Origin: Schmidtea nova
Taxonomy: Eukaryota
Direction: 5' to 3'
DNA length: 64,000 bases
Assembly: GCA_044892505.1 (NCBI GenBank)
Contig: CM097884.1
Span: 152,706,001 to 152,770,000 of the forward strand
How positions within the stretch are numbered: position 1 is the first letter of the stretch; the number at the start of each line of letters is the position of its first letter. A program made the position numbers and the translations under genes. The notes under the pieces are model-generated. The model was not told where the DNA came from. It made no database searches and worked only from the letters and a program-made list of their open reading frames with translations. Below, piece by piece: positions 6,040 to 64,000 of this stretch.

Positions 6040-6115
6040 GCTCTGCTCAAACATTGTTGATTTAATTGAAAATTATTGGTTTGTTATAAACTAGTTTTTA
6101 AATAAATAAGAATAA

Positions 6116-7538: not shown

Positions 7539-7635
7539 TATTGAATTTTTCTAAATTTAATTTTACATTTATAGGTAATACTCAATTTTGATTGGCAGCA
7601 TACTTGACATACTTTAATAATATATATATTTTTTT

Positions 7636-7974: not shown

Positions 7975-8343
7975 TTATATCCGAATTATTGTTATTCAAT
8001 TGATCACAATGAGATGTGTCATAATTCAATGAACCAATACTATGGTCATAATTATTATAATATTAGGTATTTTATATGCCCTGTATGCATAACCTCCCAA
8101 CCCATTCCCTATCATTCTTCTTATGATCAACACAAGGATCACTTAGGACAATATGCATCAACTAAAAAACAAAAATTATTTAAACGACCTAATCTAAATG
8201 ACATAAATTCTATTCTAAATAAAAAGATTAAATTAAACCCTTGTACAATTGAAAAAATATATTTACCTACAAATGAACCTAATAATTCTGATGATGAATT
8301 GATGAAAGTATTGGAAGAAGCAATGGAGGAAAAGCAATTATTG

Positions 8344-8420
8344 GAAGCGGTGGAAGAGATTGAAGCGATGGAAGCGGTGGAATCGGTGGAAGCGGTGGAA
8401 GCGGTGGAAGCGGTGGAAGT
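8344..8420 (+). repeat. 9-bp coding repeat (GAAGCGGTG)n, acidic EAV tract in the pPolB N-terminus
   Basis: Read directly. Confidence 0.85.
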
Positions 8421-11871: not shown

Positions 11872-11931
11872 TGAAGAAGATTTTGAAGAAGATTTTGAAG
11901 ATGATTTTGAAGAAGATTTTGAAGAAGATTA
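11872..11931 (+). repeat. 12-bp coding repeat (GAAGAAGATTTT)n, acidic EEDF tail of pPolB
   Basis: Read directly. Confidence 0.85.
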
Positions 11932-12149
11932 TTTATCTGAATAAATTTGAAATTTGATTTGTATTGTTTTAATTTTTATTTGTTAAAAAATTTTATTTGA
12001 TGATTAATTTGGTAAAAATATTTATTTGTTAAGACTTTTAGTGGTTTGAAAATTTCATTTTGTGTAAAAATTTTAATTTTATATTTAAAAATTTACCAAT
12101 TCTGAGTTTTCCAAAATATTTCACGCTTATTTTTAAAATATTTTCATAT

Positions 12150-12800
12150 TATGTCATTTCAACTCTCAGTTTGCCTTAATTTTACCCTTTTTTTATAAAA
12201 TTTAAATATTGCATCATTAAACTCTGATTTTGCTTTAATTTTACCCTTTTTATTTAATTTTAAAAATTATGTCATTACAACTCTGACGTTGCTTTAATTT
12301 TACCCTTTTTCATTAAGTTTTAAAAATTATGTCAGTCTTTTGTTTTTTGTAAAAATCTTCATGTTTTATTGCCTATTAAATTTAACCATTTAAATCTATT
12401 TATCATCTTTTCTAAATTAACACGTGTTTTTTTATTTATCATAAAAATTTCAATATAAAAAGTTTATTGAATTTAGTTTAAGATTTTATAAAAATTGTAT
12501 AAAAAATTTTATTCTAAAAATTTTTTACTTTGAAAAATTTACTTTAAAAATTTTACTTTAAAAATTTTAATTTACCAACTCAGAGATTGCCCGAAAAATT
12601 TTACCCTTTTTATTTAATTTTAAAAATTATGTCATTTCAACTCTGACTTTGCTTTAATTTTACCCTTTTTATTTAATTTTAAAAATTATGTCATTTCAAC
12701 TCTGACTTTGCTTTAATTTTACCCTTTTTCATTATGTTTTAAAAATTATGTCATTCTTTTGTTTTTGTAAAATTCTCCATGTTTTATTGCATATTTAATT
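12150..12800. repeat. ~59-bp AT-rich minisatellite in two clusters (~12150-12335 and ~12595-12755)
   Basis: Unit TTACCCTTTTTATTTAATTTTAAAAATTATGTCATTTCAACTCTGACTTTGCTTTAATT starts at 12241, 12300, 12601, 12660 and 12719, with matching tails after 12300 and 12719. Confidence 0.9.
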
Positions 12801-12843
12801 TAATCACGTGTTTAATACCCTTTTCTTAAATCTTTATTTAAAA

Positions 12844-13144
12844 TTTCTATTCAAAATTACCAGAGTCCCTTTTTGCCCCAGAAATTGTGGGAATTGAAAA
12901 TACTATTGAAAATAATTTCAATCTATTTTACTAGTTTAAAAATTTTACACGTGTTTTTATTTACCATAAAAAATTTAGTTCAAAATTACCAGAGTCTATA
13001 TTTGCCTGAAGAAAAATCTGGGAATTGAAAATCCTATTCAAAATTAATTTCAATGTATTTTACTAGTTTAAAAATTTTACACGTGTTTTTATTTACCATA
13101 AAAAATTTAGTTCAAAATTACCAGAATAATAACCAGAATAACCA
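12844..13144. repeat. ~130-bp imperfect tandem repeat directly left of the array
   Basis: CTATT(G/C)AAAAT...TTTTACTAGTTTAAAAATTTTACACGTGTTTTTATTTACCATAAAAAATTTAGTTCAAAATTACCAGA at ~12903-12993 and ~13034-13125. Confidence 0.9.
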
Positions 13145-13391
13145 GAAGTCGGCAAATTAGATCCGTACCTTCGGTAAAAGGATTGGCCTAAGGACCGGGT
13201 ATGATGGGCTTAGTTAAGAAGTCAGTTGGTATAGAATTGAGCTGTTTTGATGCTGTTTTGAGGCAACTTGAAATGGTGTTGAGATGGTACTTTTTTAACT
13301 GGTTGATGGGCGAATTTTGCTTTGGTTGTTGGTCTTCGGATTGATGATCGTCGTTGTACACTAAACGGTCAACTTAGAACTGGCACGGACT
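13145..13391 (+). pseudogene. Module A (unit 1): near-canonical 28S/LSU rRNA fragment H61-H63 with expansion segment ES27 (D8); present in every unit
   Basis: Matches conserved eukaryotic LSU GAAGTCGGCAAATTAGATCCGTAACTTCGGGAAAAGGATTGGCTCTAAGG and CAACTTAGAACTGGCACGGAC. ES27 has a 13-bp GCAA hairpin (13250-13279) and a UUCG hairpin (13327-13346). Long units extend the match upstream to AATGTAGGTAAGG. Confidence 0.93.
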
Positions 13392-14270
13392 AATTCGATC
13401 TGGACCTCAAATAAAATTATTGGCTCTAGAGACGCGGCGATGTGAATCTACAGGTTTAACGGATCTGTAAGGACCCTATGCGTCAATCTAGAAGTGGTTC
13501 GGATTAGTTAATTTGATTGTATAGTAAAACTGCAAGGGACCTAGTGAGCCTGAGTGGTTAGAGCTATAATATCCCTTTTAATGTCTTATGCGTCTCCTCG
13601 GAGGCTATCTTCTCATGGGACTCCGGATATTATAGTATGTTCTTTGGCTACGGGAATTAGCTTGAGAACAGCAATCAGATTTTTGCCAAAATGTGTCTAC
13701 TAATGTATCCGACATCTGCCGACGTCAAAGTTGGCCGGATATTTGCAGTGATACCGCTCTTGGCACCTTTAAGTACGGTATAGTACTGTTAGTGCACGAA
13801 GAGAAATCGCAATTACGGGCCTCCACGGGGTGCTTCCTGGTAACCATATTGTGTATGGGACAGAAGACGTATGCGGTGGTGTATTAGTTTAGGTTGAAAG
13901 GTCTAAAGGGAAACCTTACAAGATTGGACAATTTGAATTAATGCATTTCAGGTGGGTCAACGTGCTCACCGAGATGGATATCGACAGTCTTGTTGATAGT
14001 ATCCATGCACGGGGAGAGGTCGTAACCATTCCTAGGCTCCTAGATGGTACCGAAGGGGGTGGGTTGGCTTCTTCCAACTTTTTGGGTGTGAGACACTTGG
14101 TGGTCCTTCGGGGCTGCCCTTTTTATGTGTATCACTATGAGTAAAAGTGTGCAAGGCTGAACTGAGTGTACATAGTACGGAGAAAAACCGGGTGTACATT
14201 TGGGTTAAACTCTGATAAGGGAGGATCCCTGCCAATCCTAGGTGGTAAAACGGGTGAAGCATCCAATTCA
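13392..14270 (+). ncRNA. Module B (unit 1): highly diverged, hairpin-rich second copy of LSU domain IV-V (putative structured RNA)
   Basis: 13392-13433 is 31/42 identical to the H62 block of module A. 13489-13530 aligns to TAGAACTGGCACGGAC-AGGGGAATCCGACTGTTTAATTAAAAC (~30/44). Weaker colinear matches follow at H66-H67, H70-H71 and the start of domain V. Many G-U-rich stems with UUCG or GAAA loops. Transcription is not shown. Confidence 0.6.
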
Positions 14271-14302
14271 ACTTCGTACTTATAAGGACGATCTGAAACG
14301 GA

Positions 14303-14387
14303 GCCTGCGCTTTAATCAGGAAAATAAAACTCCAGGTTAATAGCTCGTTTTACTTTATCATATGAGTTTCTCTAGCCATATGCCTCG
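14303..14387 (+). pseudogene. Module C (unit 1): remnant of LSU H68-H71 including the R2/I-PpoI target region, lacking the AAGG junction
   Basis: TAGCCATATGCCTCG (14373-14387) is 14/15 identical to canonical TAGCCAAATGCCTCG, preceded by ATGAGTTTCTC versus canonical ATGACTCTCTT; upstream GCCTG(C/T)GCTTTAATC and CAGGTTAATAGC are colinear matches. Confidence 0.7.
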
Positions 14388-15718
14388 ACTGACAAAAATG
14401 ATTCTATACAAAAGATTGACAAAAAATTTTTCTATACAAAAGACCGACATAAAATTCTCTATTCAAAATAACCAGAAGTCGGCAAATTAGATCCGTACCT
14501 TCGGTAAAAGGATTGGCTCTAAGGACCGGGTATGATGGGCTTAATTAAGAAGTCAGTTGGTATAGAATTGAGCTGTTTTGATGCTGTTTTGAGGCAACTT
14601 GAAATGGTGTTGAGATGGTACTTTTTTAACTGGTTGATGGGCGAATTTTGCTTTGGTTGTTGGTCTTCGGATTGATGATCGTCGTTGTACACTAAACGGT
14701 CAACTTAGAACTGGCACGGACTAATTCGATCTGGACCTCAAATAAAATTATTGGCTCTAGAGACGCGGCGATGTGAATCTACAGGTTTAACGGATCTGTA
14801 AGGACCCTATGCGTCAATCTAGAAGTGGTTCGGATTAGTTAATTTGATTGTATAGTAAAACTGCAAGGGACCTAGTGAGCCTGAGTGGTTAGAGCTATAA
14901 TATCCCTTTTAATGTCTTATGCGTCTCCTCGGAGGCTATCTTCTCATGGGACTCCGGATATTATAGTATGTTCTTTGGCTACGGGAATTAGCTTGAGAAC
15001 AGCAATCAGATTTTTGCCAAAATGTGTCTACTAATGTATCCGACATCTGCCGACGTCAAAGTTGGCCGGATATTTGCAGTGATACCGCTCTTGGCACCTT
15101 TAAGTACGGTATAGTACTGTTAGTGCACGAAGAGAAATCGCAATTACGGGCCTCCACGAGGTGCTTCCTGGTAACCATATTGTGTATGGGACAGAAGACG
15201 TATGCGGTGGTGTATTAGTTTAGGTTGAAAGGTCTAAAGGGAAACCTTACAAGATTGGACAATTTGAATTAATGCATTTCAGGTGGGTCAACGTGCTCAC
15301 CGAGATGGATATCGACAGTCTTGTTGATAGTATCCATGCACGGGGAGAGGTCGTAACCATTCCTAGGCTCCTAGATGGTACCGCAGGGGGTGGGTTGGCT
15401 TCTTCCAACTTTTCGGATGTGAGACACCTGGTGGTCCTTCGGGGCTGCCCTTTTATGTGTATCACTATGAGTAAAAGTGTGCAAGGCTGAACTGAGTGTA
15501 CATAGTACGGAGAAAAACCGGGTGTACATTTGGGTTAAACTCTGATAAGGGAGGATCCCTGCCAATCCTGGGTGGGAAAAACGGGTGAAGCATCCAATTC
15601 AACTTCGTACCTATAAGGACGATCTGAAACGGAGCCTGCGCTTTAATCAGGAAAATAAAACTCCAGGTTAATAGCTCGTTTTACTTTATCATATGAGTTT
15701 CTCTAGCCATATGCCTCG

Positions 15719-16038
15719 ACTGACAAAAATGATTCTATACAAAAGATTGACAAAAAATTTTTCTATACAAAAGACCGACATAAAATTCTCTATTCAAAAT
15801 AACCAGAACAAAAATCCTATTCAAAAATACCAGATCAAAAATCACTGTACAAAATTTCAGAGTCCCTTTTTGCCCGAGAAAAAAATCTAGGAGTAGAAAA
15901 TCCTATTCAAAAGATTGACAAAAATTTCCTATACAAAAGATCGACCCAAAAACATAGTGGCTCCCCAACCCACCTGTACAAAAGACCGACAAAATTTTCC
16001 TAATGTAGGTAAAAATGTAGGTCAAAATGTAGGTAAGG
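15719..16038 (+). repeat. Long-form AT-rich spacer (first instance) made of CTATTCAAAA / TATACAAAAGA subrepeats
   Basis: ~233 bp longer than the short spacer; ends in three 12-bp-spaced AATGTAGGT copies that lead into the 28S module. Confidence 0.9.
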
Positions 16039-19000
16039 GAAGTCGGCAAATTAGATCCGTACCTTCGGTAAAAGGATTACCTCTAAGGACCGGGTATGAT
16101 GGGCTTAGTTAAGAAGTCAGTTGGTATAGAATTGAGCTGTTTTGATGCTGTTTTGAGGCAACTTGAAATGGTGTTGAGATGGTACTTTTTTAACTGGTTG
16201 ATGGGAGAATTTTGCTTTGGTTGTTGGTCTTCGGATTGACGATCGTCGTTGTACACTAAACGGTCAACTTAGAACTGGCACGGACTAATTCGATCTGAAC
16301 CTCAAATAAAATTATTGGCTCTAGAGACGCGGCGATGTGGATTAACAGGTTTAACGGATCTGTAATGAACCTAGGCGTCAATCTAGAAGTGGTCCGGATT
16401 AGTAAATTTGATTGTATAGTAAAACTGCAAGGGACCTAGTGAGCCTGAGTGGTTAGAGCTATAATATCCCTTTTAATGTCTTATGCGTCTCCTCGGAGGC
16501 TATCTTCTCATGGGACTCCGGATATTATAGTATGTTCTTTGGCTACGGGAATTAGCTTGAGAACAGCAATCAGATTTTTGCCAAAATGTGTCTACTAATG
16601 TATCCGCCATCTGCCGACGTCAAAGTTGGCCGGATATTTGCAGTGATACCGCTCTTGGCACCTTTAAGTACGGTATAGTACTGTTAGTGCACGAAGAGAA
16701 ATCGCAATTACGGGCCTCCACGGGGTGCTTCCTGGTAACCATATTGTGTATGGGACAGAAGACGTATGCGGTGGTGTATTAGTTTAGGTTGAAAGGTCTA
16801 AAGGGAAACCTTACAAGATTGGACAATTTGAATTAATGCATTTCAGGTGGGTCAACGTGCTCACCGAGACAGATATCGACAGTCTTGTTGATAGTATCCA
16901 TGCACGGGGAGAGGTCGTAACCATTCCTAGACTCCTAGATTGGTATCTAAGGGGGTGGGTTGGCTTCTTCCAACTTTTCGGATGTGAGACACCTGGTGGT
17001 CCTTCGGGGCTGCCCTTTTATGTGTATCACTATGAGTAAAAGTGTGCAAGGCTGAACTGAGTGTACATAGTACGGAGAAAAACCGGGTGTACATTTGGGT
17101 TAAACTCTGATAAGGGAGGATCCCTGCCAATCCTGGGTGGGAAAAGCGGGTGAAGCATTCAATTCAACTCCGTACCTATAAGGACGGTCTGAAACGAAGC
17201 CTGTGCTTTAATCAGGAAAATAAAACTCCAGGTTAATAGCCCGTTTTACTTTATCAATGAGTTTCTCTAGCCATATGCCTCGACTGACAAAAATGATTCT
17301 ATACAAAAGATTGACAAAACATTTTTCTATACAAAAGACCGACATAAAATTCTCTATTCAAAATAACCAGAAGTCGGCAAATTAGATCCGTAACTTCGGT
17401 AAAAGGATTGGCTCTAAGGACCGGGTATGATGGGCTTAGTTAAGAAGTCAGTTGGTATAGAATTGAGCTGTTTTGATGCTGTTTTGAGGCAACTTGAAAT
17501 GGTGTTGAGATGGTACTTTTTTAACTGGTTGATGGGCGAATTTTGCTTTGGTTGTTGGTCTTCGGATTGATGATCGTCGTTGTACACTAAACGGTCAACT
17601 TAGAACTGGCACGGACTAATTCGATCTGGACCTCAAATAAAATTATTGGCTCTAGAGACGTGCCGATGTGGATTTACAGGTTTAACGGATCTGTAATGAA
17701 CCTATGCGTCAGTCTAGAAGTGGTCCGGATTAGTTAATTTGATTGTATAGTAAAACTGCAAGGGACCTAGTGAGCCTGAGTGGTTAGAGCTATAATATCC
17801 CTTTTAATGTCTTATGCGTCTCTTTGGAGGCTATCTTCTCATGGGACTCCGGATATTATAGTATGTTTTTTGGCTACAGGAATTAGCTTTAGAACAGCAA
17901 TCAGATTTTTGCCAAAATGTGTCTACTAATGTATCCGCCATCTGCCGACGTCAAAGTTGGCCGGATATTTGCAGTGATACTGCTCTTGGCACCTTTAAGT
18001 ACAGTATAGTACTGTTAGTGCATGAAGAGAAATCGCAATTACGGGCCTCCACGGGGTGCTTCCTGGTAACCATATTGTGTATGGGACAGAAGACGTATGC
18101 GGTGGTGTATTAGTTTAAGTTGAAAGGTCTAAAGGGAAACCTTACAAGATTGGACAATTTGAATTAATGCATTTCAGGTGGGTCAACGTGCTCACCGAGA
18201 TGGATATCGACAGTCTTGTTGATAGTATCCATGCACGGGGAGAGGTCGTAACCATTCCTATGCTCCTAGATGGTACCGAAGGGGGTGGGTTGGCTTCTTC
18301 CAACTTTTTGGGTGTGAGACACTTGGTGGTCCTTCGGGGCTGCCCTTTTTATGTGTATCACTATGAGTAAAAGTGTGCAAGGCTGAACTGAGTGTACATA
18401 GTACGGAGAAAAACCGGGTGTACATTTGGGTTAAACTCTGATAAGGGAGGATCCCTGCCAATCCTGGGTGGGAAAAGCGGGTGAAGCATTCAATTCAACT
18501 CCGTACCTATAAGGACGGTCTGAAACGAAGCCTGTGCTTTAATCAGGAAAATAAAACTCCAGGTTAATAGCCCGTTTTACTTTATCAATGAGTTTCTCTA
18601 GCCATATGCCTCGACTGACAAAAATGATTCTATACAAAAGATTGACAAAACATTTTTCTATACAAAAGACCGACATAAAATTCTCTATTCAAAATAACCA
18701 GAAGTCGGCAAATTAGATCCGTAACTTCGGTAAAAGGATTGGCTCTAAGGACCGGGTATGATGGGCTTAGTTAAGAAGTCAGTTGGTATAGAATTGAGCT
18801 GTTTTGATGCTGTTTTGAGGCAACTTGAAATGGTGTTGAGATGGTACTTTTTTAACTGGTTGATGGGCGAATTTTGCTTTGGTTGTTGGTCTTCGGATTG
18901 ATGATCGTCGTTGTACACTAAACGGTCAACTTAGAACTGGCACGGACTAATTCGATCTGGACCTCAAATAAAATTATTGGCTCTAGAGACGTGCCGATGT

Positions 19001-22000
19001 GGATTTACAGGTTTAACGGATCTGTAATGAACCTATGCGTCAGTCTAGAAGTGGTCCGGATTAGTTAATTTGATTGTATAGTAAAACTGCAAGGGACCTA
19101 GTGAGCCTGAGTGGTTAGAGCTATAATATCCCTTTTAATGTCTTATGCGTCTCTTTGGAGGCTATCTTCTCATGGGACTCCGGATATTATAGTATGTTTT
19201 TTGGCTACAGGAATTAGCTTTAGAACAGCAATCAGATTTTTGCCAAAATGTGTCTACTAATGTATCCGCCATCTGCCGACGTCAAAGTTGGCCAGATATT
19301 TGCAGTGATACTGCTCTTGGCACCTTTAAGTACAGTATAGTACTGTTAGTGCATGAAGAGAAATCGCAATTACGGGCCTCCACGGGGTGCTTCCTGGTAA
19401 CCATATTGTGTATGGGACAGAAGACGTATGCGGTGGTGTATTAGTTTAAGTTGAAAGGTCTAAAGGGAAACCTTACAAGATTGGACAATTTGAATTAATG
19501 CATTTCAGGTGGGTCAACGTGCTCACCGAGATGGATATCGACAGTCTTGTTGATAGTATCCATGCACGGGGAGAGGTCGTAACCATTCCTAGGCTCCTAG
19601 ATGGTACCGAAGGGGGTGGGTTGGCTTCTTCCAACTTTTTGGGTGTGAGACACTTGGTGGTCCTTCGGGGCTGCCCTTTTTATGTGTATCACTATGAGTA
19701 AAAGTGTGCAAGGCTGAACTGAGTGTACATAGTACGGAGAAAAACCGGGTGTACATTTGGGTTAAACTCTGATAAGGAAGGATCCCTGCCAATCCTGGGT
19801 GGGAAAAGCGGGTGAAGCATTCAATTCAACTCCGTACCTATAAGGACGGTCTGAAACGAAGCCTGTGCTTTAATCAGGAAAATAAAACTCCAGGTTAATA
19901 GCCCGTTTTACTTTATCATATGAGTTTCTCTAGCCATATGCCTCGACTGACAAAAATGATTCTATACAAAAGATTGACAAAAAATTTTTCTATACAAAAG
20001 ACCGACATAAAATTCTCTATTCAAAATAACCAGAACAAAAATCCTATTCAAAAATACCAGATCAAAAATCACTGTACAAAATTTCAGAGTCCCTTTTTGC
20101 CCGAGAAAAAAATCTAGGAGTAGAAAATCCTATTCAAAAGATTGACAAAAATTTCCTATACAAAAGATCGACCCAAAAACATAGTGGCTCCCCAACCCAC
20201 CTGTACAAAAGACCGACAAAATTTTCCTAATGTAGGTAAAAATGTAGGTCAAAATGTAGGTAAGGGAAGTCGGCAAATTAGATCCGTACCTTCGGTAAAA
20301 GGATTGGCTCTAAGGACCGGGTATGATGGGCTTAGTTAAGAAGTCAGTTGGTATAGAATTGAGCTGTTTTGATGCTGTTTTGAGGCAACTTGAAATGGTG
20401 TTGAGATGGTACTTTTTTAACTGGTTGATGGGGGAATTTTGCTTTGGTTGTTGGTCTTCTGATTGACGATCGTCGTTGTACACTAAACGGTCAACTTAGA
20501 ACTGGCACGGACTAATTCGATCTGGACCTCAAATAAACTTATTGGCTCTAGAGACGCGGCGATGTGGATTTACAGGTTTAACGGATCTGTAATGAACCTA
20601 GGCGTCAATCTAGAAGTGGTCCGGATTAGTAAATTTGATTGTATAGTAAAACTGCAAGGGACCTAGTGAGCCTGAGTGGTTAGAGCTATAATATCCCTTT
20701 TAATGTCTTATGCGTCTCTTTGGAGGCTATCTTCTCATGGGACTCCGGATATTATAGTATGTTCTTTGGCTACGGGAATTAGCTTGAGAACAGCAATCAG
20801 ATTTTTGCCAAAATGTGTCTACTAATGTATCCTACATCTGCCGACGTCAAATTTGGCCGGATATTTGCAGTGATACCGCTCTTGGCACCTTTAGGTACGG
20901 TAAAGTACTGTTAGTGCACGAAGAGAAATCGCAATTACGGGCCTCCACGGGGTGCTTCCTGGTAACCATATTGTGTATGGGACAGAAGACGTATGCGGTG
21001 ATGTATTAGTTTAGGTTGAAAGGTCTAAAGGGAAACCTTACAAGATTGGACAATTTGAATTAATGCATTTCAGGTGGGTCAACGTGCTCACCGAGACAGA
21101 TATCGACAGTCTCGTTGATAGTATCCATGCAAGGGGAGAGGTCGTAACCATTCCTAGACTCCTAGATTGGTATCTAAGGGGGTGGGTTGGCTTCTTCCAA
21201 CTTTTCGGATGTGAGACACCTGGTGGTCCTTCGGGGCTGCCCTTTTATGTGTATCACTATGAGTAAAAGTGTGCAAGGCTGAACTGAGTGTACATAGTAC
21301 GGAGAAAAACCGGGTGTAAATTTGGGTTAAACTCTGATAAGGGAGGATCCCTGCCAATCCTGGGTGGGAAAAGCGGGTAAAGCATTCAATTCAACTCCGT
21401 ACCTATAAGGACGGTCTGAAACGAAGCCTGTGCTTTAATCAGGAAAATAAAACTCCAGGTTAATAGCCCGTTTTACTTTATCAATGAGTTTCTCTAGCCA
21501 TATGCCTCGACTGACAAAAATGATTCTATACAAAAGATTGACAAAAAATTTTTCTATACAAAAGACCGACATAAAATTCTCTATTTAAAATAACCAGAAG
21601 TCGGCAAATTAGATCCGTACCTTCGGTAAAAGGATTGGCTCTAAGGACCGGGTATGATGGGCTTAGTTAAGAAGTCAGTTGGTATAGAATTGAGCTGTTT
21701 TGATGCTGTTTTGAGGCAACTTGAAATGGTGTTGAGATGGTACTTTTTTAACTGGTTGATGGGCGAATTTTGCTTTGGTTGTTGGTCTTCGGATTGATGA
21801 TCGTCGTTGTACACTAAACGGTCAACTTAGAACTGGCACGGACTAATTCGATCTGGACCTCAAATAAAATTCTTGGCTCTAGAGACGTGCCGATGTGGAT
21901 ATACAGGTTTAACGGATCTGTAATGAACATATGCGTCAATCTAGAAGTGGTCCGGATTAGTAAATTTGATTGTATAGTAAAACTGCAAGGGACCTAGTGA

Positions 22001-25000
22001 GCCTGAGTGGTTAGAGCTATAATATCCCTTTTAATGTCTTATGCGTCTCTTTGGAGGCTATCTTCTCATGGGGCTCCGGATATTATAGTATGTTTTTTGG
22101 CTACAGGAATTAGCTTTAGAACAGCAATCAGAGTTTTGCCAAAATGTGTCTACTAATGTATCCGACATCTGCCGACGTCAAAGTTGGCCGGATATTTGCA
22201 GTGATACCGCTCTTGGCACATTTAAGTACGGTATAGTACTGTTGGTGCATGAAGAGAAATCGCAATTACGGGCCTCCACGGGGTGCTTCCTGGTAACTAT
22301 ATTGTGTATGGGACAGAAGACGTATGCGGTGGTGTATTAGTTTAAGTTGAAAGGTCTAAAGGGAAACCTTACAAGATTGGACAATTTGAATTAATGCATT
22401 TCAGGTGGGTCAACGTGCTCACCGAGATGGATATCGACAGTCTTGTTGATAGTATCCATGCACGGGGAGAGGTCGTAACCATTCCTAGGCTCCTAGATGG
22501 TACCGAAGGGGGTGGGTTGGCTTCTTCCAACTTTTTGGGTGTGAGACACTTGGTGGTCCTTCGGGGCTGCCCTTTTTATGTGTATCACTATGAGTAAAAG
22601 TGTGCAAGGCTGAACTGAGTGTACATAGTACGGAGAAAAACCGGGTGTACATTTGGGTTAAACTCTGATAAGGGAGGATCCCTGCCAATCCTGGGTGGGA
22701 AAAGCGGGTGAAGCATTCAATTCAACTCCGTACCTATAAGGACGGTCTGAAACGAAGCCTGTGCTTTAATCAGGAAAATAAAACTCCAGGTTAATAGCCC
22801 GTTTTACTTTATCAATGAGTTTCTCTAGCCATATGCCTCGACTGACAAAAATGATTCTATACAAAAGATTGACAAAAAATTTTTCTATACAAAAGACCGA
22901 CATAAAATTCTCTATTCAAAATAACCAGAACAAAAATCCTATTCAAAAATACCAGATCAAAAATCACTGTACAAAATTTCAGAGTCCCTTTTTGCCCGAG
23001 AAAAAAATCTAGGAGTAGAAAATCCTATTCAAAAGATTGACAAAAATTTCCTATACAAAAGATCGACCCAAAAACATAGTGGCTCCCCAACCCACCTGTA
23101 CAAAAGACCGACAAAATTTTCCTAATGTATGTAAAAATGTAGGTCAAAATGTAGGTAAGGGAAGTCGGCAAATTAGATCCGTACCTTCGGTAAAAGGATT
23201 GGCTCTAAGGACCGGGTATGATGGGCTTAGTTAAGAAGTCAGTTGGTATAGAATTGAGCTGTTTTGATGCTGTTTTGAGGCAACTTAAAATGGTGTTGAG
23301 ATGGTACTTTTTTAACTGGTTGATGGGAGAATTTTGCTTTGGTTGTTGGTCTTCGGATTGACGATCGTCGTTGTACACTAAACGGTCAACTTAGAACTGG
23401 CACGGACTAATTCGATCTGGACCTCAAATAAAAATATTGGCTCTAGAGACGCGGCGATGTGGATTTACAGGTTTAACGGATCTGTAATGAACCTAGGCGT
23501 CAATCTAGAAGTGGTCCGGATTAGTAAATTTGATTGTATAGTAAAACTGCAAGGGACCTAGTGAGCCTGAGTGGTTAGAGCTATAATATCCCTTTTAATG
23601 TCTTATGCGTCTCTTTGGAAGCTATCTTCTCATGGGGCTCCGGATATTATAGTATGTTTTTTGGCTACGGGAATTAGCTTGAGAACAGCAATCAGATTTT
23701 TGCCAAAATGTGTCTATTAATGTATCCGACATCTGCTGACGTCAAAGTTGGCCGGATATTTGCAGTGATACCGCTCTTGGCACCTTTAAGTACGGTATAG
23801 TACTGTTGGTGCATGAGGAGAAATCGCAATTACGAGCCTCCACGGGGTGCTTCCTGGTAACCATATTGTGTATGGGACAGAAGACGTATGCGGTGGTGTA
23901 TTAGTTTAAGTTGAAAGGTCTAAAGGGAAACCTTACAAGATTGGACAATTTGAATTATTGCATTTCAGGTGGGTCAACGTGCTCACCGAGACAGATATCG
24001 ACAGTCTTGTTGATAGTATCCATGCACGGGGAGAGGTCGTAACCATTCCTAGACTCCTAGATTGGTATCTAAGGGGGTGGGTTGGCTTCTTCCAACTTTT
24101 CGGATGTGAGACACCTGGTGGTCCTTTGGGGCTGCCCTTTTATGTGTATCACTATGAGTAAAAGTGTGCAAGGCTGAACTGAGTGTACATAGTACGGAGA
24201 AATACCGGGTGTACATTTGGGTTAAACTCTGATAAGGGAGGATCCCTGCCAATCCTGGGTGGGAAAAGCGGGTGAAGCATTCAATTCAACTCCGTACCTA
24301 TAAGGACGGTCTGAAACGAAGCCTGTGCTTTAATCAGGAAAATAAAACTCCAGGTTAATAGCCCGTTTTACTTTATCAATGAGTTTCTCTAGCCATATGC
24401 CTCGACTGACAAAAATGATTCTATACAAAAGATTGACAAAAAATATTCTATACAAAAGACCGACATAAAATTCTCTATTCAAAATAACCAGAAGTCGGCA
24501 AATTAGATCCGTACCTTCGTTAAAAGGATTGGCTCTAAGGACCGGGTATGATGGGCTTAGTTAAGAAGTCAGTTGGTATAGAATTGAGCTGTTTTGATGC
24601 TGTTTTGAGGCAACTTGAAATGGTGTTGAGATGGTACTTTTTTAACTGGTTGATGGGCGAATTTTGCTTTGGTTGTTGGTCTTCGGATTGATGATCGTCG
24701 TTGTACACTAAACAGTCAACTTAGAACTGGCACGGACTAATTCGATCTGGACCTCAAATAAAATTATTGGCTCTAGAGAGGTGCCGATGTGCATTTACAG
24801 GTTTAACGGATCTGTAATGAACCTATGCGTCAATCTAGAAGTGGTCCGGATTAGTAAATTTGATTGTATAGTAAAACTGCAAGGGACCTAGTGAGCCTGA
24901 GTGGTTAGAGCTATAATATCCCTTTTAATGTCTTATGCGTCTCCTCGGAGGCTATCTTCTCATGGGACTCCGGATATTATAGTATGTTCTTTGGCTACGG

Positions 25001-28000
25001 GAATTAGCTTGAGAACAGCAATCAGATTTTTGCCAAAATGTGTCTACCAATGTATCCGACATCTGCCGACGTCAAAGTTGGCCGGATATTTGCAGTGATA
25101 CCGCTCTTGGCACCTTTAAGTACGGTATAGTACTGTTAGTGCACGAAGAGAAATCGCAATTACGGGCCTCCACGGGGTGCTTCCTGGTAACCATATTGTG
25201 TATGGGACAGAAGACGTATGCGGTGGTGTATTAGTTTAGGTTGAAAGGTCTAAAGGGAAACCTTACAAGATTGGACAATTTGAATTAATGCATTCCAGGT
25301 GGGTCAACGTGCTCACCGAGACAGATATCGACAGTCTTGTTGATAGTATCCATGCACGGGGAGAGGTCGTAACCATTCCTAGACTCCTAGATTGGTATCT
25401 AAGGGGGTGAGTTGGCTTCTTCCAACTTTTCGGATGTGAGACACCTGGTGGTCCTTCGGGGCTGCCCTTTTATGTGTATCACTATGAGTAAAAGTGTGCA
25501 AGGCTGAACTGAGTGTACATAGTACGGAGAAAAACCGGGTGTACATTTGGGTTAAACTCTGATAAGGGAGGATCCCTGCCAATCCTGGGTGGGAAAAGCG
25601 GGTGAAGCATTCAATTCAACTCCGTACCTATAAGGACGGTCTGAAACGAAGCCTGTGCTTTAATCAGGAAAATAAAACTCCAGGTTAATAGCCCGTTTTA
25701 CTTTATCAATGAGTTTCTATAGCCATATGCCTCGACTGACAAAAATGATTCTATACAAAAGATTGACAAAACATTTTTCTATACAAAAGACCGACATAAA
25801 ATTCTCTATTCAAAATAACCAGAAGTCGGCAAATTAGATCCGTAACTTCGGTAAAAGGATTGGCTCTAAGGACCGGGTATGATGGGCTTAGTTAAGAAGT
25901 CAGTTGGTATAGAATTGAGCTGTTTTGATGCTGTTTTGAGGCAACTTGAAATGGTGTTGAGATGGTACTTTTTTAACTGGTTGATGGGCGAATTTTGCTT
26001 TGGTTGTTGGTCTTCGGATTGATGATCGTCGTTGTACACTAAACGGTCAACTTAGAACTGGCACGGACTAATTCGATCTGGACCTCAAATAAAATTATTG
26101 GCTCTAGAGACGTGCCGATGTGGATTTACAGGTTTAACGGATCTGTAATGAACCTATGCGTCAGTCTAGAAGTGGTCCGGATTAGTTAATTTGATTGTAT
26201 AGTAAAACTGCAAGGGACCTAGTGAGCCTGAGTGGTTAGAGCTATAATATCCCTTTTAATGTCTTATGCGTCTCTTTGGAGGCTATCTTCTCATGGGACT
26301 CCGGATATTATAGTATGTTTTTTGGCTACAGGAATTAGCTTTAGAACAGCAATCAGATTTTTGCCAAAATGTGTCTACTAATGTATCCGCCATCTGCCGA
26401 CGTCAAAGTTGGCCGGATATTTGCAGTGATACTGCTCTTGGCACCTTTAAGTACAGTATAGTACTGTTAGTGCATGAAGAGAAATCGCAATTACGGGCCT
26501 CCACGGGGTGCTTCCTGGTAACCATATTGTGTATGGGACAGAAGACGTATGCGGTGGTGTATTAGTTTAAGTTGAAAGGTCTAAAGGGAAACCTTACAAG
26601 ATTGGACAATTTGAATTAATGCATTTCAGGTGGGTCAACGTGCTCACCGAGATGGATATCGACAGTCTTGTTGATAGTATCCATGCACGGGGAGAGGTCG
26701 TAACCATTCCTAGGCTCCTAGATGGTACCGAAGGGGGTGGGTTGGCTTCTTCCAACTTTTTGGGTGTGAGACACTTGGTGGTCCTTCGGGGCTGCCCTTT
26801 TTATGTGTATCACTATGAGTAAAAGTGTGCAAGGCTGAACTGAGTGTACATAGTACGGAGAAAAACCGGGTGTACATTTGGGTTAAACTCTGATAAGGGA
26901 GGATCCCTGCCAATCCTGGGTGGGAAAAGCGGGTGAAGCATTCAATTCAACTCCGTACCTATAAGGACGGTCTGAAACGAAGCCTGTGCTTTAATCAGGA
27001 AAATAAAACTCCAGGTTAATAGCCCGTTTTACTTTATCAATGAGTTTCTCTAGCCATATGCCTCGACTGACAAAAATGATTCTATACAAAAGATTGACAA
27101 AACATTTTTCTATACAAAAGACCGACATAAAATTCTCTATTCAAAATAACCAGAAGTCGGCAAATTAGATCCGTAACTTCGGTAAAAGGATTGGCTCTAA
27201 GGACCGGGTATGATGGGCTTAGTTAAGAAGTCAGTTGGTATAGAATTGAGCTGTTTTGATGCTGTTTTGAGGCAACTTGAAATGGTGTTGAGATGGTACT
27301 TTTTTAACTGGTTGATGGGCGAATTTTGCTTTGGTTGTTGGTCTTCGGATTGATGATCGTCGTTGTACACTAAACGGTCAACTTAGAACTGGCACGGACT
27401 AATTCGATCTGGACCTCAAATAAAATTATTGGCTCTAGAGACGTGCCGATGTGGATTTACAGGTTTAACGGATCTGTAATGAACCTATGCGTCAGTCTAG
27501 AAGTGGTCCGGATTAGTTAATTTGATTGTATAGTAAAACTGCAAGGGACCTAGTGAGCCTGAGTGGTTAGAGCTATAATATCCCTTTTAATGTCTTATGC
27601 GTCTCTTTGGAGGCTATCTTCTCATGGGACTCCGGATATTATAGTATGTTTTTTGGCTACAGGAATTAGCTTTAGAACAGCAATCAGATTTTTGCCAAAA
27701 TGTGTCTACTAATGTATCCGCCATCTGCCGACGTCAAAGTTGGCCAGATATTTGCAGTGATACTGCTCTTGGCACCTTTAAGTACAGTATAGTACTGTTA
27801 GTGCATGAAGAGAAATCGCAATTACGGGCCTCCACGGGGTGCTTCCTGGTAACCATATTGTGTATGGGACAGAAGACGTATGCGGTGGTGTATTAGTTTA
27901 AGTTGAAAGGTCTAAAGGGAAACCTTACAAGATTGGACAATTTGAATTAATGCATTTCAGGTGGGTCAACGTGCTCATCGAGATGGATATCGACAGTCTT

Positions 28001-31000
28001 GTTGATAGTATCCATGCACGGGGAGAGGTCGTAACCATTCCTAGGCTCCTAGATGGTACCGAAGGGGGTGGGTTGGCTTCTTCCAACTTTTTGGGTGTGA
28101 GACACTTGGTGGTCCTTCGGGGCTGCCCTTTTTATGTGTATCACTATGAGTAAAAGTGTGCAAGGCTGAACTGAGTGTACATAGTACGGAGAAAAACCGG
28201 GTGTACATTTGGGTTAAACTCTGATAAGGAAGGATCCCTGCCAATCCTGGGTGGGAAAAGCGGGTGAAGCATTCAATTCAACTCCGTACCTATAAGGACG
28301 GTCTGAAACGAAGCCTGTGCTTTAATCAGGAAAATAAAACTCCAGGTTAATAGCCCGTTTTACTTTATCAATGAGTTTCTCTAGCCATATGCCTCGACTG
28401 ACAAAAATGATTCTATACAAAAGATTGACAAAAAATTTTTCTATACAAAAGACCGACATAAAATTCTCTATTCAAAATAACCAGAACAAAAATCCTATTC
28501 AAAAATACCAGATCAAAAATCACTGTACAAAATTTCAGAGTCCCTTTTTGCCCGAGAAAAAAATCTAGGAGTAGAAAATCCTATTCAAAAGATTGACAAA
28601 AATTTCCTATACAAAAGATCGACCCAAAAACATAGTGGCTCCCCGACCCACCTGTACAAAAGACCGACAAAATTTTCCTAATGTAGGTAAAAATGTAGGT
28701 CAAAATGTAGGTAAGGGAAGTCGGCAAATTAGATCCGTACCTTCGGTAAAAGGATTGGCTCTAAGGACCGGGTATGATGGGCTTAGTTAAGAAGTCAGTT
28801 GGTATAGAATTGAGCTGTTTTGATGCTGTTTTGAGGCAACTTGAAATGGTGTTGAGATGGTACTTTTTTAACTGGTTGATGGGGGAATTTTGCTTTGGTT
28901 GTTGGTCTTCTGATTGACGATCGTCGTTGTACACTAAACGGTCAACTTAGAACTGGCACGGACTAATTCGATCTGGACCTCAAATAAACTTATTGGCTCT
29001 AGAGACGCGGCGATGTGGATTTACAGGTTTAACGGATCTGTAATGAACCTAGGCGTCAATCTAGAAGTGGTCCGGATTAGTTAATTTGATTGTATAGTAA
29101 AACTGCAAGGGACCTAGTGAGCCTGAGTGGTTAGAGCTATAGTTTCCCTTTTAATGTCTTATGCGTCTCTTTGGAGGCTATCTTCTCATGGGACTCCGGA
29201 TATTATAGTATGTTCTTTGGCTACGGGAATTAGCTTGAGAACAGCAATCAGATTTTTGCCAAAATGTGTCTACTAATGTATCCTACATCTGCCGACGTCA
29301 AATTTGGCCGGATATTTGCAGTGATACCGCTCTTGGCACCTTTAGGTACGGTAAAGTACTGTTAGTGCACGAAGAGAAATCGCAATTACGGGCCTCCACG
29401 GGGTGCTTCCTGGTAACCATATTGTGTATGGGACAGAAGACGTATGCGGTGATGTATTAGTTTAGGTTGAAAGGTCTAAAGGGAAACCTTACAAGATTGG
29501 ACAATTTGAATTAATGCATTTCAGGTGGGTCAACGTGCTCACCGAGACAGATATCGACAGTCTCGTTGATAGTATCCATGCAAGGGGAGAGGTCGTAACC
29601 ATTCCTAGACTCCTAGATTGGTATCTAAGGGGGTGGGTTGGCTTCTTCCAACTTTTCGGATGTGAGACACCTGGTGGTCCTTCGGGGCTGCCCTTTTATG
29701 TGTATCACTATGAGTAAAAGTGTGCAAGGCTGAACTGAGTGTACATAGTACGGAGAAAAACCGGGTGTAAATTTGGGTTAAACTCTGATAAGGGAGGATC
29801 CCTGCCAATCCTGGGTGGGAAAAGCGGGTAAAGCATTCAATTCAACTCCGTACCTATAAGGACGGTCTGAAACGAAGCCTGTGCTTTAATCAGGAAAATA
29901 AAACTCCAGGTTAATAGCCCGTTTTACTTTATCAATGAGTTTCTCTAGCCATATGCCTCGACTGACAAAAATGATTCTATACAAAAGATTGACAAAAAAT
30001 TTTTCTATACAAAAGACCGACATAAAATTCTCTATTTAAAATAACCAGAAGTCGGCAAATTAGATCCGTACCTTCGGTAAAAGGATTGGCTCTAAGGACC
30101 GGGTATGATGGGCTTAGTTAAGAAGTCAGTTGGTATAGAATTGAGCTGTTTTGATGCTGTTTTGAGGCAACTTGAAATGGTGTTGAGATGGTACTTTTTT
30201 AACTGGTTGATGGGCGAATTTTGCTTTGGTTGTTGGTCTTCGGATTGATGATCGTCGTTGTACACTAAACGGTCAACTTAGAACTGGCACGGACTAATTC
30301 GATCTGGACCTCAAATAAAATTCTTGGCTCTAGAGACGTGCCGATGTGGATATACAGGTTTAACGGATCTGTAATGAACATATGCGTCAATCTAGAAGTG
30401 GTCCGGATTAGTAAATTTGATTGTATAGTAAAACTGCAAGGGACCTAGTGAGCCTGAGTGGTTAGAGCTATAATATCCCTTTTAATGTCTTATGCGTCTC
30501 TTTGGAGGCTATCTTCTCATGGGGCTCCGGATATTATAGTATGTTTTTTGGCTACAGGAATTAGCTTTAGAACAGCAATCAGAGTTTTGCCAAAATGTGT
30601 CTACTAATGTATCCGACATCTGCCGACGTCAAAGTTGGCCGGATATTTGCAGTGATACCGCTCTTGGCACATTTAAGTACGGTATAGTACTGTTGGTGCA
30701 TGAAGAGAAATCGCAATTACGGGCCTCCACGGGGTGCTTCCTGGTAACTATATTGTGTATGGGACAGAAGACGTATGCGGTGGTGTATTAGTTTAAGTTG
30801 AAAGGTCTAAAGGGAAACCTTACAAGATTGGACAATTTGAATTAATGCATTTCAGGTGGGTCAACGTGCTCACCGAGATGGATATCGACAGTCTTGTTGA
30901 TAGTATCCATGCACGGGGAGAGGTCGTAACCATTCCTAGGCTCCTAGATGGTACCGAAGGGGGTGGGTTGGCTTCTTCCAACTTTTTGGGTGTGAGACAC

Positions 31001-61000: not shown

Positions 61001-64000
61001 TATTGGCTCTAGAGACGCGGCGATGTGGATTTACAGGTTTAACGGATCTGAAATGAACCTAGGCGTCAATCTAGAAGTGGTCCGGATTAGTAAATTTGAT
61101 TGTATAGTAAAACTGCAAGGGACCTAGTGAGCCTGAGTGGTTAGAGCTATAATATCCCTTTTAATGTCTTATGCGTCTCCTCGGAGGCTATCTTCTCATG
61201 GGACTCCGGATATTATAGTATGTTCTTTGGCTACGGGAATTAGCTTGAGAACAGCAATCAGATTTTTGCCAAAATGTGTCTACTAATGTATCCGACATCT
61301 GCCGACGTCAAAGTTGGCCGGATATTTGCAGTGATACCGCTCTTGGCACCTTTAAGTACGGTATAGTACTGTTAGTGCACGAAGAGAAATCGCAATTACG
61401 GGCCTCCACGGGGTGCTTCCTGGTAACCATATTGTGTATGGGACAGAAGACGTATGCGGTGGTGTATTAGCTTAGGTTGAAAGGTCTAAAGGGAAACCTT
61501 ACAAGATTGGCCAATTTGAATTAATGCATTTCAGGTGGGTCAACGTGCTCACCGAGATGGATATCGACAGTCTTGTTGATAGTATCCATGCACGGGTAGA
61601 GGTCGTAACCATTCCTAGACTCCTAGATTGGTATCTAAGGGGGTGGGTTGGCTTCTTCCAACTTTTCGGATGTGAGACACCTGGTGGTCCTTCGGGGCTG
61701 CCCTTTTATGTGTATCACTATGAGTAAAAGTGTGCAAGGCTGAACTGAGTGTACATAGTACGGAGAAAAACCGGGTGTACATTTGGGTTAAACTCTGATA
61801 AGGGAGGATCCCTGCCAATCCTGGGTGGGAAAAGCGGGTGAAGCATTCAATTCAACTCCGTACCTATAAGGATGGTCTGAAACGAAGCCTGTGCTTTAAT
61901 CAGGAAAATAAAACTCCAGGTTAATAGCCCGTTTTACTTTATCAATGAGTTTCTCTAGCCATATGCCTCGACTGACAAAAATGATTCTATACAAAAGATT
62001 GACAAAAAATTTTCTATACAAAAGACCGACATAAAATTCTCTATTCAAAATAACCAGAACAAAAATCCTATTCAAAAATACCAGATCAAAAATCCTTGTA
62101 CAAAATTTCAGAGTCCCTTTTTGCCCGAGAAAAAAATCTAGGAGTAGAAAATCCTATTCAAAAGATTGACAAAAATTTCCTATACAAAAGATCGACCCAA
62201 AAACATAGTGGCTCCCCAACCCACCTGTACAAAAGACCGACAAAATTTTCCTAATGTAGGTAAAAATGTAGGTCAAAATGTAGGTAAGGGAAGTCGGCAA
62301 ATTAGATCCGTACCTTCGTTAAAAGGATTGGCTCTAAGGACCGGGTATGATGGGCTTAGTTAAGAAGTCAGTTGGTATAGAATTGAGCTGTTTTGATGCT
62401 GTTTTGAGGCAACTTGAAATGGTGTTGAGATGGTACTTTTTTAACTGGTTGATGGGGGAATTTTGCTTTGGTTGTTGGTCTTCGGATTGACGATCGTCGT
62501 TGTACACTAAACGGTCAACTTAGAACTGGCACGGACTAATTCGATCTGGACCTCAAATAAAATTATTGGCTCTAGAGACGCGGCGATGTGGATTTACAGG
62601 TTTAACGGATCTGTAATGAACCTAGGCGTCAATCTAGAAGTGGTCCGGATTAGTAAATTTGATTGTATAGTAAAACTGCAAGGGACCTAGTGAGCCTGAG
62701 TGGTTAGAGCTATAATATCCCTTTTAATGTCTTATGCGTCTCCTCGGAGGCTATCTTCTCATGGGACTCCGGATATTATAGTATGTTCTTTGGCTACGGG
62801 AATTAGCTTGAGAACAGCAATCAGATTTTTGCCAAAATGTGTCTACTAATGTATCCGACATCTGCCGACGTCAAAGTTGGCCGGATATTTGCAGTGATAC
62901 CGCTTTTGGCACCTTTAAGTACGGTATAGTACTGTTAGTGCACGAAGAGAAATCGCAATTACGGGCCTCCGCGGGGTGCTTCCTGGTAACCATATTGTGT
63001 ATGGGACAGAAGACGTATGCGGTGGTGTATTAGTTTAGGTTGAAAGGTCTAAAGGGAAACCTTACAAGATTGGACAATTTGAATTAATGCATTTCCGGTG
63101 GGTCAACGTGCTCACCGAGACAGATATCGACAGTCTTGTTGATAGTATCCATGCACGGGTAGAGGTCGTAACCATTCCTAGACTCCTAGATTGGTATCTA
63201 AGGGGGTGGGTTGGCTTCTTCCAACTTTTCGGATGTGAGACAACTGGTGGTCCTTCGGGGCTGCCCTTTTATGTGTATCACTATGAGTAAAAGTGTGCAA
63301 GGCTGAACTGAGTGTACATCGTACGGAGAAAAACCGGGTGTACATTTGGGTTAAACTCTGATAAGGGAGGATCCCTGCCAATCCTGGGTGGGAAAAGCGG
63401 GTGAAGCATTCAATTCAACTCCGTACCTATAAGGACGGTCTGAAACGAAGCATGTGCTTTAATCAGGAAAATAAAACTCCAGGTTAATAGCCCGTTTTAC
63501 TTTATCAATGAGTTTCTCTAGCCATATGCCTCGACTGACAAAAATGATTCTATACAAAAGATTGACAAAACATTTTTCTATACAAAAGACCGACATAAAA
63601 TTCTCTATTCAAAATAACCAGAACAAAAATCCTATTCAAAAATACCAGATCAAAAATCACTGTACAAAATTTCAGAGTCCCTTTTTGCCCGAGAAAAAAA
63701 TCTAGGAGTAGAAAATCCTATTCAAAAGATTGACAAAAATTTCCTATACAAAAGATCGACCCAAAAACATAGTGGCTCCCCAACCCACCTGTACAAAAGA
63801 CCGACAAAATTTTCCTAATGTAGGTAAAAATGTAGGTCAAAATGTAGGTAAGGGAAGTCGGCAAATTAGATCCGTACCTTCGGTAAAAGGATTGGCTCTA
63901 AGGACCGGGTATGATGGGCTTAGTTAAGAAGTCAGTTGGTATAGAATTGAGCTGTTTTGATGCTGTTTTGAGGCAACTTGAAATGGTGTTGAGATGGTAC

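What the first reader, a model, noticed from the sequence alone, without database searches (positions are those of the whole stretch)
13145..64000. >50-kb tandem array of a non-coding LSU-rRNA-derived cassette that is not an rDNA repeat
Units of 1.33 or 1.56 kb contain no 18S, 5.8S or full 28S, only domain IV-V pieces in sense orientation plus an AT spacer. They are amplified at least 35 times right after a near-intact virus-like element. Possible roles (inference): a source of rRNA-like structured RNA or small RNAs, a decoy array for rDNA-targeting endonucleases or retroelements, or a rolling-circle/eccDNA-derived satellite. I do not recognise it as a described repeat family.
Basis: partly seen in the sequence, partly recalled or inferred. 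Interest (0 to 1): 0.8.

Follow-up and report, generated by a model that had tools for sequence, protein, structure and literature searches.

The report
Satellite array built on 28S fragment
A head-to-tail array of more than 50 kb repeats a unit that joins about 250 bases of the large-subunit ribosomal RNA gene to a 1-kb non-coding, RNA-like sequence of unknown origin. It looks like a satellite grown from one rDNA junction, as the Drosophila R1 arrays were, and not like a working gene array.

Summary
The array is real. Window 13145-64000 (+) holds 35 full units and one cut unit, of 1330, 1564 or (twice) 1536 bp, 96.6-99.8% alike. Only about 250 nt of each unit is rRNA: one piece of eukaryotic LSU rRNA around expansion segment ES27. 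The "domain IV-V pieces" were not confirmed. The rest is a ~1-kb core at 44.5% GC and an A-rich tail of ~27-nt subrepeats. The core has no ORF above 67 aa, no Pfam, PDB or Rfam match, and no true protein relative. It folds well only on the rRNA-sense strand. All units share one 28S-to-core joint, and the tail-to-28S joint has two classes (long, or short through a 233-nt deletion). Blocks of 3-6 units are duplicated and the edge units are the most diverged. This points to one founder spread by unequal exchange. Substitutions break predicted RNA pairs as often as they keep them. The best reading (0.4) is a satellite founded by an rDNA-inserted non-coding element plus a duplicated 28S target segment, like R1 arrays but with a far longer 28S piece. 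The main rival (0.3) is an internal rDNA rearrangement. The host's own rDNA could not be obtained, so the origin of the core stays open. No evidence supports a function.

The parts
56..679 (+). Polinton/Maverick-like element: A32-like packaging ATPase gene (context, not part of the array)
   Evidence: Pfam Pox_A32 E 1.7e-6 and other P-loop families
1266..2358 (+). Polinton-like element: rve-type integrase gene, broken. It reads as two ORFs in different frames, i.e. one frameshift-type break
   Evidence: Pfam rve and rve_3 on the two pieces
2364..6039 (+). Four tightly packed ORFs of the element with no family match
   Evidence: No Pfam, PHROGs or PDB hit
7636..7974 (.). Run of N, left untouched
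8014..11383 (+). Polinton-like element: protein-primed family-B DNA polymerase gene, broken. It reads as two ORFs in different frames, i.e. one frameshift-type break
   Evidence: Pfam DNA_pol_B_2 E 1e-19 and Endonuclease_7. Full-length relatives are 1109-1274 aa and 48-52% identical at best
12090..13144 (.). AT-rich (20.6% GC) nested repeats: 59-nt and 132-nt tandems and a ~420-nt duplication. The segment 12839-13043 is homologous to the long spacer of the array
13145..64000 (+). The tandem array: 35 full units and one unit cut by the window end
16024..16285 (+). Example unit: 28S piece (Rfam LSU_rRNA_eukarya model ~1895-2137, ES27 with its two conserved flanks). In short units the piece starts 18 nt later
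16286..16346 (+). Example unit: start of the core, a ~70% diverged copy of the first ~60 nt of the same 28S piece
   Evidence: Smith-Waterman score 43 against shuffles 27.3 +/- 3.8 (max 42 of 300). nhmmer E 0.003. Not seen by the Rfam model
16286..17282 (+). Example unit: non-coding core, 44.5% GC. Structure specific to the + strand is concentrated in 16390-17090
17283..17371 (+). Example unit: A-rich, G-poor tail of ~27-nt subrepeats (short form)
15809..16041 (+). Segment present only in long units (233 nt): further subrepeats, the module shared with the left flank, and three tandem copies of the first ~11 nt of the 28S piece. It is absent from short units through a deletion with GAA microhomology

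Best explanation
The array is a satellite that lies outside any working rRNA gene. Its unit descends from a single founder in which a non-coding, structured sequence with an A-rich tail sat in a 28S gene just after the ES27 region. That sequence was most likely a non-autonomous or internally deleted rDNA-inserting retroelement, co-transcribed with the 28S. About 250 bp of 28S target were duplicated at its other end. This would arise from a very long target-site duplication or double insertion, or from a 28S leader kept on the template RNA.

The resulting element-28S-element dimer then expanded by unequal exchange in blocks of one to six units. One 233-nt deletion gave the short unit. The array now drifts without function. 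The 28S piece is kept more uniform than the rest, probably by conversion from the true rDNA.

Shown: the anatomy, the single founder, the block duplications, and the neutral-looking variation. Inferred: the retroelement nature of the core, how the first dimer arose, and the conversion.
For: - Each copy of the core plus tail is separated by the same 28S segment in sense orientation. This is the layout of R1 arrays, which have 14- or 33-nt 28S segments and lie outside the rDNA (PMC5932611, PMC2718515).
- Both ends of the 28S piece fall in universally conserved blocks flanking ES27. Very long 28S duplications by a site-specific element are known (R9, 126 bp; PMC6895275).
- There is one 28S-to-core joint. 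The tail-to-28S joint has only two classes in 35 units.
- Blocks are duplicated: u04-u08 match u10-u14 with 0-4 differences per unit pair, and u17-u19 match u20-u22 with 0-3. Edge units u01 and u02 are the most diverged.
- The core is non-coding. It folds significantly only on the rRNA-sense strand: z -4.07 against -1.12, and -1.9 to -3.4 in windows across most of 16390-17090, like the genuine 28S piece.
- The tail is A-rich and G-poor.
- The first ~11 nt of the 28S piece are repeated three times at the tail-to-28S joint. The core begins with an old copy of the same 28S boundary. Short tandem 28S duplications at R2 joints are documented (PMC3774820).
- The 28S piece has half the variable columns of the core (p 0.004).
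Against: - The window holds no reverse transcriptase or endonuclease remnant.
- No self-cleaving ribozyme was found by Rfam. My HDV-like descriptor gave no more hits than shuffles.
- The 28S position is not one I can tie to a described R element.
- The tail is a set of subrepeats, not a poly(A).
- Neither end of the array shows the flanking 28S expected for an insertion inside rDNA. The left edge is spacer-like and the right edge is outside the window.
- No copy of the core was found elsewhere, though the collections searched hold almost no eukaryotic genomes.
- No transposon library (Dfam/Repbase) was available.
Confidence: 0.4

Rival explanations
1. The founder was an internal rearrangement of an ordinary rDNA unit and no mobile element was involved. 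In this reading the core is a transcribed or proximal spacer of the same rDNA and the tail is IGS subrepeats. Two microhomology-mediated deletions, or the circularisation of a 1.5-kb fragment (eccDNA), made a mini-unit that was then amplified.
For: - The order 28S piece, then structured GC-richer RNA-like stretch, then AT-rich subrepeats is collinear with 28S, 3' spacer, IGS.
- The core has rRNA-like composition (G>C, U>=A) and sense-strand folding equal to the true 28S piece.
- The ~27-nt subrepeats vary in copy number, as IGS repeats do.
- There is microhomology at the short-unit deletion (GAA) and at the 28S-to-core joint (CGG(A)C).
Against: - It needs at least two separate joints.
- It does not explain why an old and a fresh 28S copy both start at the same boundary.
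- It does not explain the triple repeat of that boundary.
- No other rRNA or spacer family is detectable in the core.
- It could not be tested, because no native rDNA of the host could be retrieved.
Confidence: 0.3
2. The units are genes for a structured non-coding RNA, or a small-RNA source or decoy, kept in many copies because the RNA or the 28S target piece is used.
For: Folding is strand-specific. The 28S piece is less variable than the core. Three pairs show changes on both sides that keep pairing.
Against: - Among variable predicted pairs, 29 changes keep pairing and 33 break it. Three compensatory pairs is within the range of the slid controls (0-3).
- 14 of 35 units are changed in a universally conserved 28S block.
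- There is no Rfam family.
- Size variants and block duplications are typical of satellites.
Confidence: 0.07
3. The length or the internal order of the array is an assembly artefact, through false duplication or mis-joining of a shorter repeat.
For: Blocks of 3-6 units recur with 0-4 differences per unit pair.
Against: There are 151 variant types, three unit sizes, a divergence gradient from the edge, and a consistent unique left junction. An artefact would alter copy number, not the existence of the unit.
Confidence: 0.05
4. The stretch is part of the host's ordinary rDNA, for example an unusually long IGS or a fragmented rRNA gene system.
For: It contains near-native 28S sequence and spacer-like subrepeats.
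Against: 51 kb contain no 18S, 5.8S or any other part of the 28S. The same 28S piece is repeated 36 times and carries changes at conserved positions.
Confidence: 0.05

Closest known systems
Tandem arrays of the rDNA-specific retrotransposon R1 in Drosophila (X-heterochromatin array of D. melanogaster; arrays in seven other species)
   Same: Copies sit head to tail and each is separated by an identical 28S segment. One founder dimer expanded by unequal exchange. The array shows higher-order structure and deletion variants. It lies outside functional rRNA genes and spans tens of kb to Mb (PMC5932611, PMC2718515).
   Different: There the 28S segment is 14 or 33 nt and here it is 247-262 nt. R1 units are about 5 kb and encode proteins. 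Here the partner is ~1.1-1.3 kb, non-coding and of unknown family. The 28S position is different.
R9 elements of bdelloid rotifers
   Same: A 28S-specific element whose insertion duplicates an exceptionally long stretch of 28S (126 bp; cited in PMC6895275). Two such insertions at one site would give element-28S-element units.
   Different: R9 encodes a reverse transcriptase and a restriction-like endonuclease, and none is seen here. The duplication here would be twice as long. I could not read the R9 paper, so its site could not be compared.
SIDEs (short internally deleted, non-autonomous derivatives of R2 and R2/R1)
   Same: They are short, non-coding and co-transcribed with 28S. [quoted passage not shown]
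   Different: SIDEs start with an HDV-like ribozyme and end with the R2 3' UTR. No ribozyme was found here, and no autonomous partner is available to compare.
rDNA-derived satellites and rRNA-derived elements (IGS-derived satellites of plants; SINE28)
   Same: Pieces of the rDNA unit are amplified outside the rDNA (reviewed in PMC10946416).
   Different: Those satellites come from the IGS, not from the middle of the 28S. SINE28 is dispersed, not tandem.

Membership tests
Ordinary rDNA repeat unit | 18S, 5.8S and complete 28S genes in each unit | tested here: not met
   Rfam finds only one ~250-nt LSU piece per unit and nothing else
R-element tandem array (R1 type) | Head-to-tail copies separated by one identical 28S segment in sense orientation | tested here: met
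   There are 35 units with one 28S-to-core joint and two classes of tail-to-28S joint
R-element tandem array (R1 type) | The repeated partner is a non-LTR retrotransposon (RT and endonuclease genes, or recognisable remnants) | tested here: not met
   No ORF exceeds 67 aa. Pfam gives only noise on ORFs and on open frames of the sense strand. The longest open frame has no true relative among 1.84 billion representatives
R-element tandem array (R1 type) | The 28S segment equals the element's target-site duplication at its known insertion site | not testable with these tools
   No native 28S of the host and no transposon library were available. From my own knowledge the R1 and R2 sites lie further downstream in the 28S. 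No unit contains 28S beyond model position ~2137
SIDE / R2-type non-autonomous element | HDV-like self-cleaving ribozyme at the 5' end | tested here: not met
   There is no Rfam ribozyme at E<=10. My own double-pseudoknot descriptor found 2 sites, both inside ES27, against 0-5 per shuffle. The descriptor is crude
SIDE / R2-type non-autonomous element | 3' end shared with an autonomous element of the same genome | not testable with these tools
   No other DNA of this genome could be reached
rDNA/IGS-derived satellite | Unit homologous to the species' own spacer (IGS, ETS, ITS) | not testable with these tools
   Native rDNA was not retrievable
Retrozyme / viroid-like repeat | Hammerhead or other small self-cleaving ribozyme in each unit | tested here: not met
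   No such Rfam family appears in 12500-18000 at E<=0.1 or in the core at E<=10
Group I or group II intron in rDNA | Match to the intron covariance models; 28S continues after the insert | tested here: not met
   There is no Intron_gpI or gpII hit. After the insert the 28S restarts upstream and does not continue. The GIIM Pfam hit has E 0.14-0.21, which is noise
tRNA-derived SINE | tRNA-like head | tested here: not met
   ARAGORN finds nothing in 1-20000

The most novel reading that the evidence does not exclude
The unit is a full-length copy of an undescribed, non-autonomous 28S-specific retroelement. Its two target cuts, or its RNA 5' end and insertion point, bracket the whole ES27 region, so each insertion duplicates about 250 bp of 28S, the longest such duplication known. 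The old 28S-like copy at the start of the core and the triple repeat at the tail joint would then be traces of repeated cycles at the same two 28S positions.
Probability: 0.15. Interest if true: 0.65.

Novelty: new variant of a known kind. Interest (0 to 1): 0.4.

Why it matters
If the retroelement origin holds, this would extend the known route from rDNA-specific insertion to satellite to a non-coding element, with a 28S duplication about twice the R9 record. It would also mark a new target region beside ES27. The lower variability of the 28S piece would give a natural read-out of sequence exchange between the rDNA and an rDNA-derived satellite elsewhere. If the unit is only an internal rDNA rearrangement, it is an ordinary rDNA-derived satellite. 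In that case it matters mainly as a caution for rDNA copy counting and for annotation, because 36 or more partial LSU hits are not rRNA genes.

Tried and rejected
- **Coding remnant in the core: rejected.** ORFs on both strands and ten of the sixteen open frames (at least 24 codons) of the sense strand gave only noise in Pfam. PDB gave noise. The 83-codon frame with a faint maturase-like motif hit only a translated tandem repeat in the 1.84-billion-protein search.\n- **Known RNA family in the core: none**.\n- **HDV-like ribozyme:** not above shuffles.\n- **tRNA-like head:** none.\n- **Tail subrepeats as decayed copies of the 28S boundary: rejected.** Score 15 against shuffles 13.9 +/- 2.3.\n- **Core related to the neighbouring Polinton-like element: rejected.** Only the spacer module matches, and only the AT-rich flank.\n- **Selection on RNA structure within the array:** not seen.\n- **Finding the unit or the host's 28S elsewhere: nothing found.** Two viral, two metagenome and two genome-collection scans with core, joint or 28S words, one further viral scan with a 28S word, and five look-ups of small ORFs all came back empty.\n- **Host organism:** not identified. 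Relatives of the polymerase are unnamed ENA/JGI proteins.\n- **R9 paper:** could not be read.
Full report
**The observation**

The window has two parts. Bases 1-13144 are AT-rich (20-30% GC). Bases 13145-64000 are uniformly about 41-43% GC with a positive GC skew. Exact 20-mers recur at spacings of 1331 and 1564. A self-BLAST lays 36 copies end to end on the + strand, 96.6-99.8% identical to the query copy. A 17-nt anchor defines 35 full units plus a cut one, in the order SLSSLSLSSSLSLSLSSSSSSSSLLLLLLLLLLLL. Short units are 1330 bp and long units are 1564 bp. Two long units are 1536 bp because they lack one 28-nt subrepeat. The array, its coordinates, unit sizes and copy number are therefore confirmed.

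**What a unit contains**

Rfam finds one match per unit, to eukaryotic LSU rRNA. It covers model positions ~1908-2137 in short units and ~1895-2137 in long ones (90-92 bits when a unit is searched alone). This is expansion segment ES27 with the two universally conserved blocks that flank it. By my knowledge of yeast numbering that places it at the start of domain IV. No 18S, 5.8S or other 28S part is present.

The 28S piece ends at ...ACGGAC. A ~1-kb core follows (example unit 16286-17282) with 44.5% GC. The core has:
- no ORF above 67 aa;
- no Pfam signal on ORFs or on open frames of the sense strand;
- no PDB relative;
- no Rfam family at E<=10;
- no tRNA.

The longest open frame (83 codons) was sent to the 1.84-billion-protein search, because the claim of non-coding rests on absence of relatives. 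The single hit is a translated tandem repeat matched in eight weak stretches, which is an artefact.

After the core comes an A-rich, G-poor tail of ~27-nt subrepeats. Long units carry 233 nt more. This extra segment holds further subrepeats and a module 77-92% identical to the left flank of the array (12839-13043). It also holds three tandem copies of the first ~11 nt of the 28S piece. Short units lack exactly this segment, with GAA microhomology at the deletion.

Only about one sixth of a unit is rRNA.

**Two further features of the core**

First, the core folds better than shuffles only on the rRNA-sense strand. The whole-core z-score is -4.07 against -1.12 for the opposite strand. In 200-nt windows the signal lies in 16390-17090, with z between -1.9 and -3.4 in all but one window. 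This is the same level as the genuine 28S piece (-2.6 and -2.7), and the opposite strand shows none.

Second, the first ~60 nt of the core are a ~70% diverged copy of the first ~60 nt of the 28S piece itself. The Smith-Waterman score is 43 against shuffles of 27.3 +/- 3.8, with a maximum of 42 in 300. nhmmer gives E 0.003. The match starts exactly at the joint and exactly at the boundary used by the short units. The Rfam model does not see it. So the 28S-to-core joint reads like a head-to-tail joint between a fresh and an old copy of the same 28S boundary, with CGG(A)C microhomology. I cannot explain this fully.

**How the array grew**

All 35 units share one 28S-to-core joint. The tail-to-28S joint has only two classes, long and short, apart from point variants. 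Blocks recur almost unchanged:
- units 4-8 match units 10-14, with 0-4 differences per unit pair;
- units 17-19 match units 20-22, with 0-3 differences.

The two units at the left edge are the most diverged. This is the signature of a single founder spread by unequal exchange or block duplication. It is not the signature of repeated independent insertions.

The substitution spectrum is biased from GC to AT, with a mild excess at CpG.

**Is the RNA structure or the rRNA piece under constraint?**

On the consensus fold of the 35 cores, 265 of 325 pairs never vary. Among the variable pairs, 29 changes keep pairing and 33 break it. Three pairs changed on both sides, which is within the range of controls with slid partners (0-3). 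That looks neutral.

In the 28S piece, 14 of 35 units carry one or two changes in a block that is invariant in working rRNAs. Even so, the 28S piece has only half as many variable columns as the core: 15 of 246 against 120 of 963, Fisher p 0.004, and this is not due to CpG. I infer homogenisation by conversion from the true rDNA and not a function, but this is not shown.

**Surroundings**

Bases 56-11944 carry a Polinton/Maverick-like element on the + strand. It has an A32-like ATPase, an rve integrase and a protein-primed B-family polymerase, plus several ORFs without matches. The window start cuts the element and it contains an N run, which I left alone. The integrase and the polymerase are each broken once by a frameshift-type break. 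I do not list the places.

Full-length relatives of the polymerase are 1109-1274 aa, at best 48-52% identical, and all are unnamed ENA or JGI proteins. The host therefore stays unknown.

Between the element and the array lie 1.05 kb of AT-rich nested repeats. These share a module with the long spacer. They may be the decayed edge of the array or the terminal region of the element. The core has no similarity to the element. I see no evidence that the neighbourhood is more than co-residence in repeat-rich DNA.

**Comparison with what is known**

- R1 elements of Drosophila form tandem arrays in which copies are separated by the 14-nt or 33-nt 28S target duplication. They are explained by double insertion followed by unequal exchange. 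The D. melanogaster array is 0.5-1.3 Mb, lies outside the rDNA, and has deletion variants and higher-order structure (PMC5932611, PMC2718515).
- R2 joints can carry 13-28-nt tandem duplications of upstream 28S when the template RNA keeps a 28S leader (PMC3774820).
- R9 of rotifers duplicates 126 bp of 28S (PMC6895275).

The present array has the same architecture. It differs in having a much longer 28S segment, a partner with no recognisable reverse transcriptase, ribozyme or family, and a different 28S position. I therefore do not file it as an R-element array. It works like one and fails or cannot be tested on the defining gene content.

The main rival is that the core is a spacer of the host's own rDNA and the unit is a twice-deleted or circularised mini-rDNA. 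This fits the collinear order and the rRNA-like composition and folding. It leaves the doubled 28S boundary unexplained.

The decisive comparison is with the host's own rDNA and a transposon library, and I could not run it. Scans of the viral, metagenome and prokaryotic genome collections and five ORF look-ups found nothing.

**Verdict**

The array is real, large and clean. It is a new variant of a known kind: a satellite founded on an rDNA junction. I found no evidence of function. The origin of its 1-kb core is unresolved.

**Slips and limits**

- While reasoning I twice recalled stretches of rRNA sequence from memory.
- In my working I also looked at the ORF bounds that the ORF listing printed for the two broken genes of the Polinton-like element. 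Those bounds bracket the breaks.
- The short patterns sent to the DNA search were copied from the window.
- No contig that I took for human was met.
Majority states were used inside scripts only for counting.

Noticed in passing
window 877-1206 (+): A small basic ORF of the Polinton-like element has a C-terminal match to adenovirus protein X/mu (PF05829, E 1.6e-5, 25.1 bits against a cutoff of 25). It may be a core or DNA-condensing protein.
   Followed up: no
window 8014-11383 (+): The protein-primed polymerase gene carries an Endonuclease VII-like stretch (PF02945). The same pairing is recorded for relatives P0001, P0004 and P0005. The gene is broken once, as is the integrase at 1266-2358.
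   Followed up: partly
window 12090-13144: AT-rich nested repeats: 59-nt and 132-nt tandems and a ~420-nt duplication. They share a module with the long spacer of the array. It is unclear whether this is the decayed array edge or the terminal region of the Polinton-like element.
   Followed up: partly
window 17372-24492 versus 25824-32944, and 35840-39830 versus 39831-43820: Multi-unit blocks repeat with 0-4 differences per unit pair. They are either very recent segmental duplications or false duplications in the assembly.
   Followed up: partly
window 13145-64000: Variation among units is biased from GC to AT (56 of 151 variant types). 16 of those 56 are at CpG, where CpG holds 16% of the G/C positions. 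This is a mild sign of cytosine methylation of the repeat.
   Followed up: partly
window 16411-16461 (and the same place in every unit): The longest stretch invariant in all 35 units (51 nt) contains a motif that looks like a tRNA D-arm, but ARAGORN finds no tRNA.
   Followed up: partly
P0011: The only hit of the large protein search is a 705-aa 'protein' that is plainly a translated tandem repeat. It is an example of a spurious multi-stretch E-value (4e-10).
   Followed up: yes
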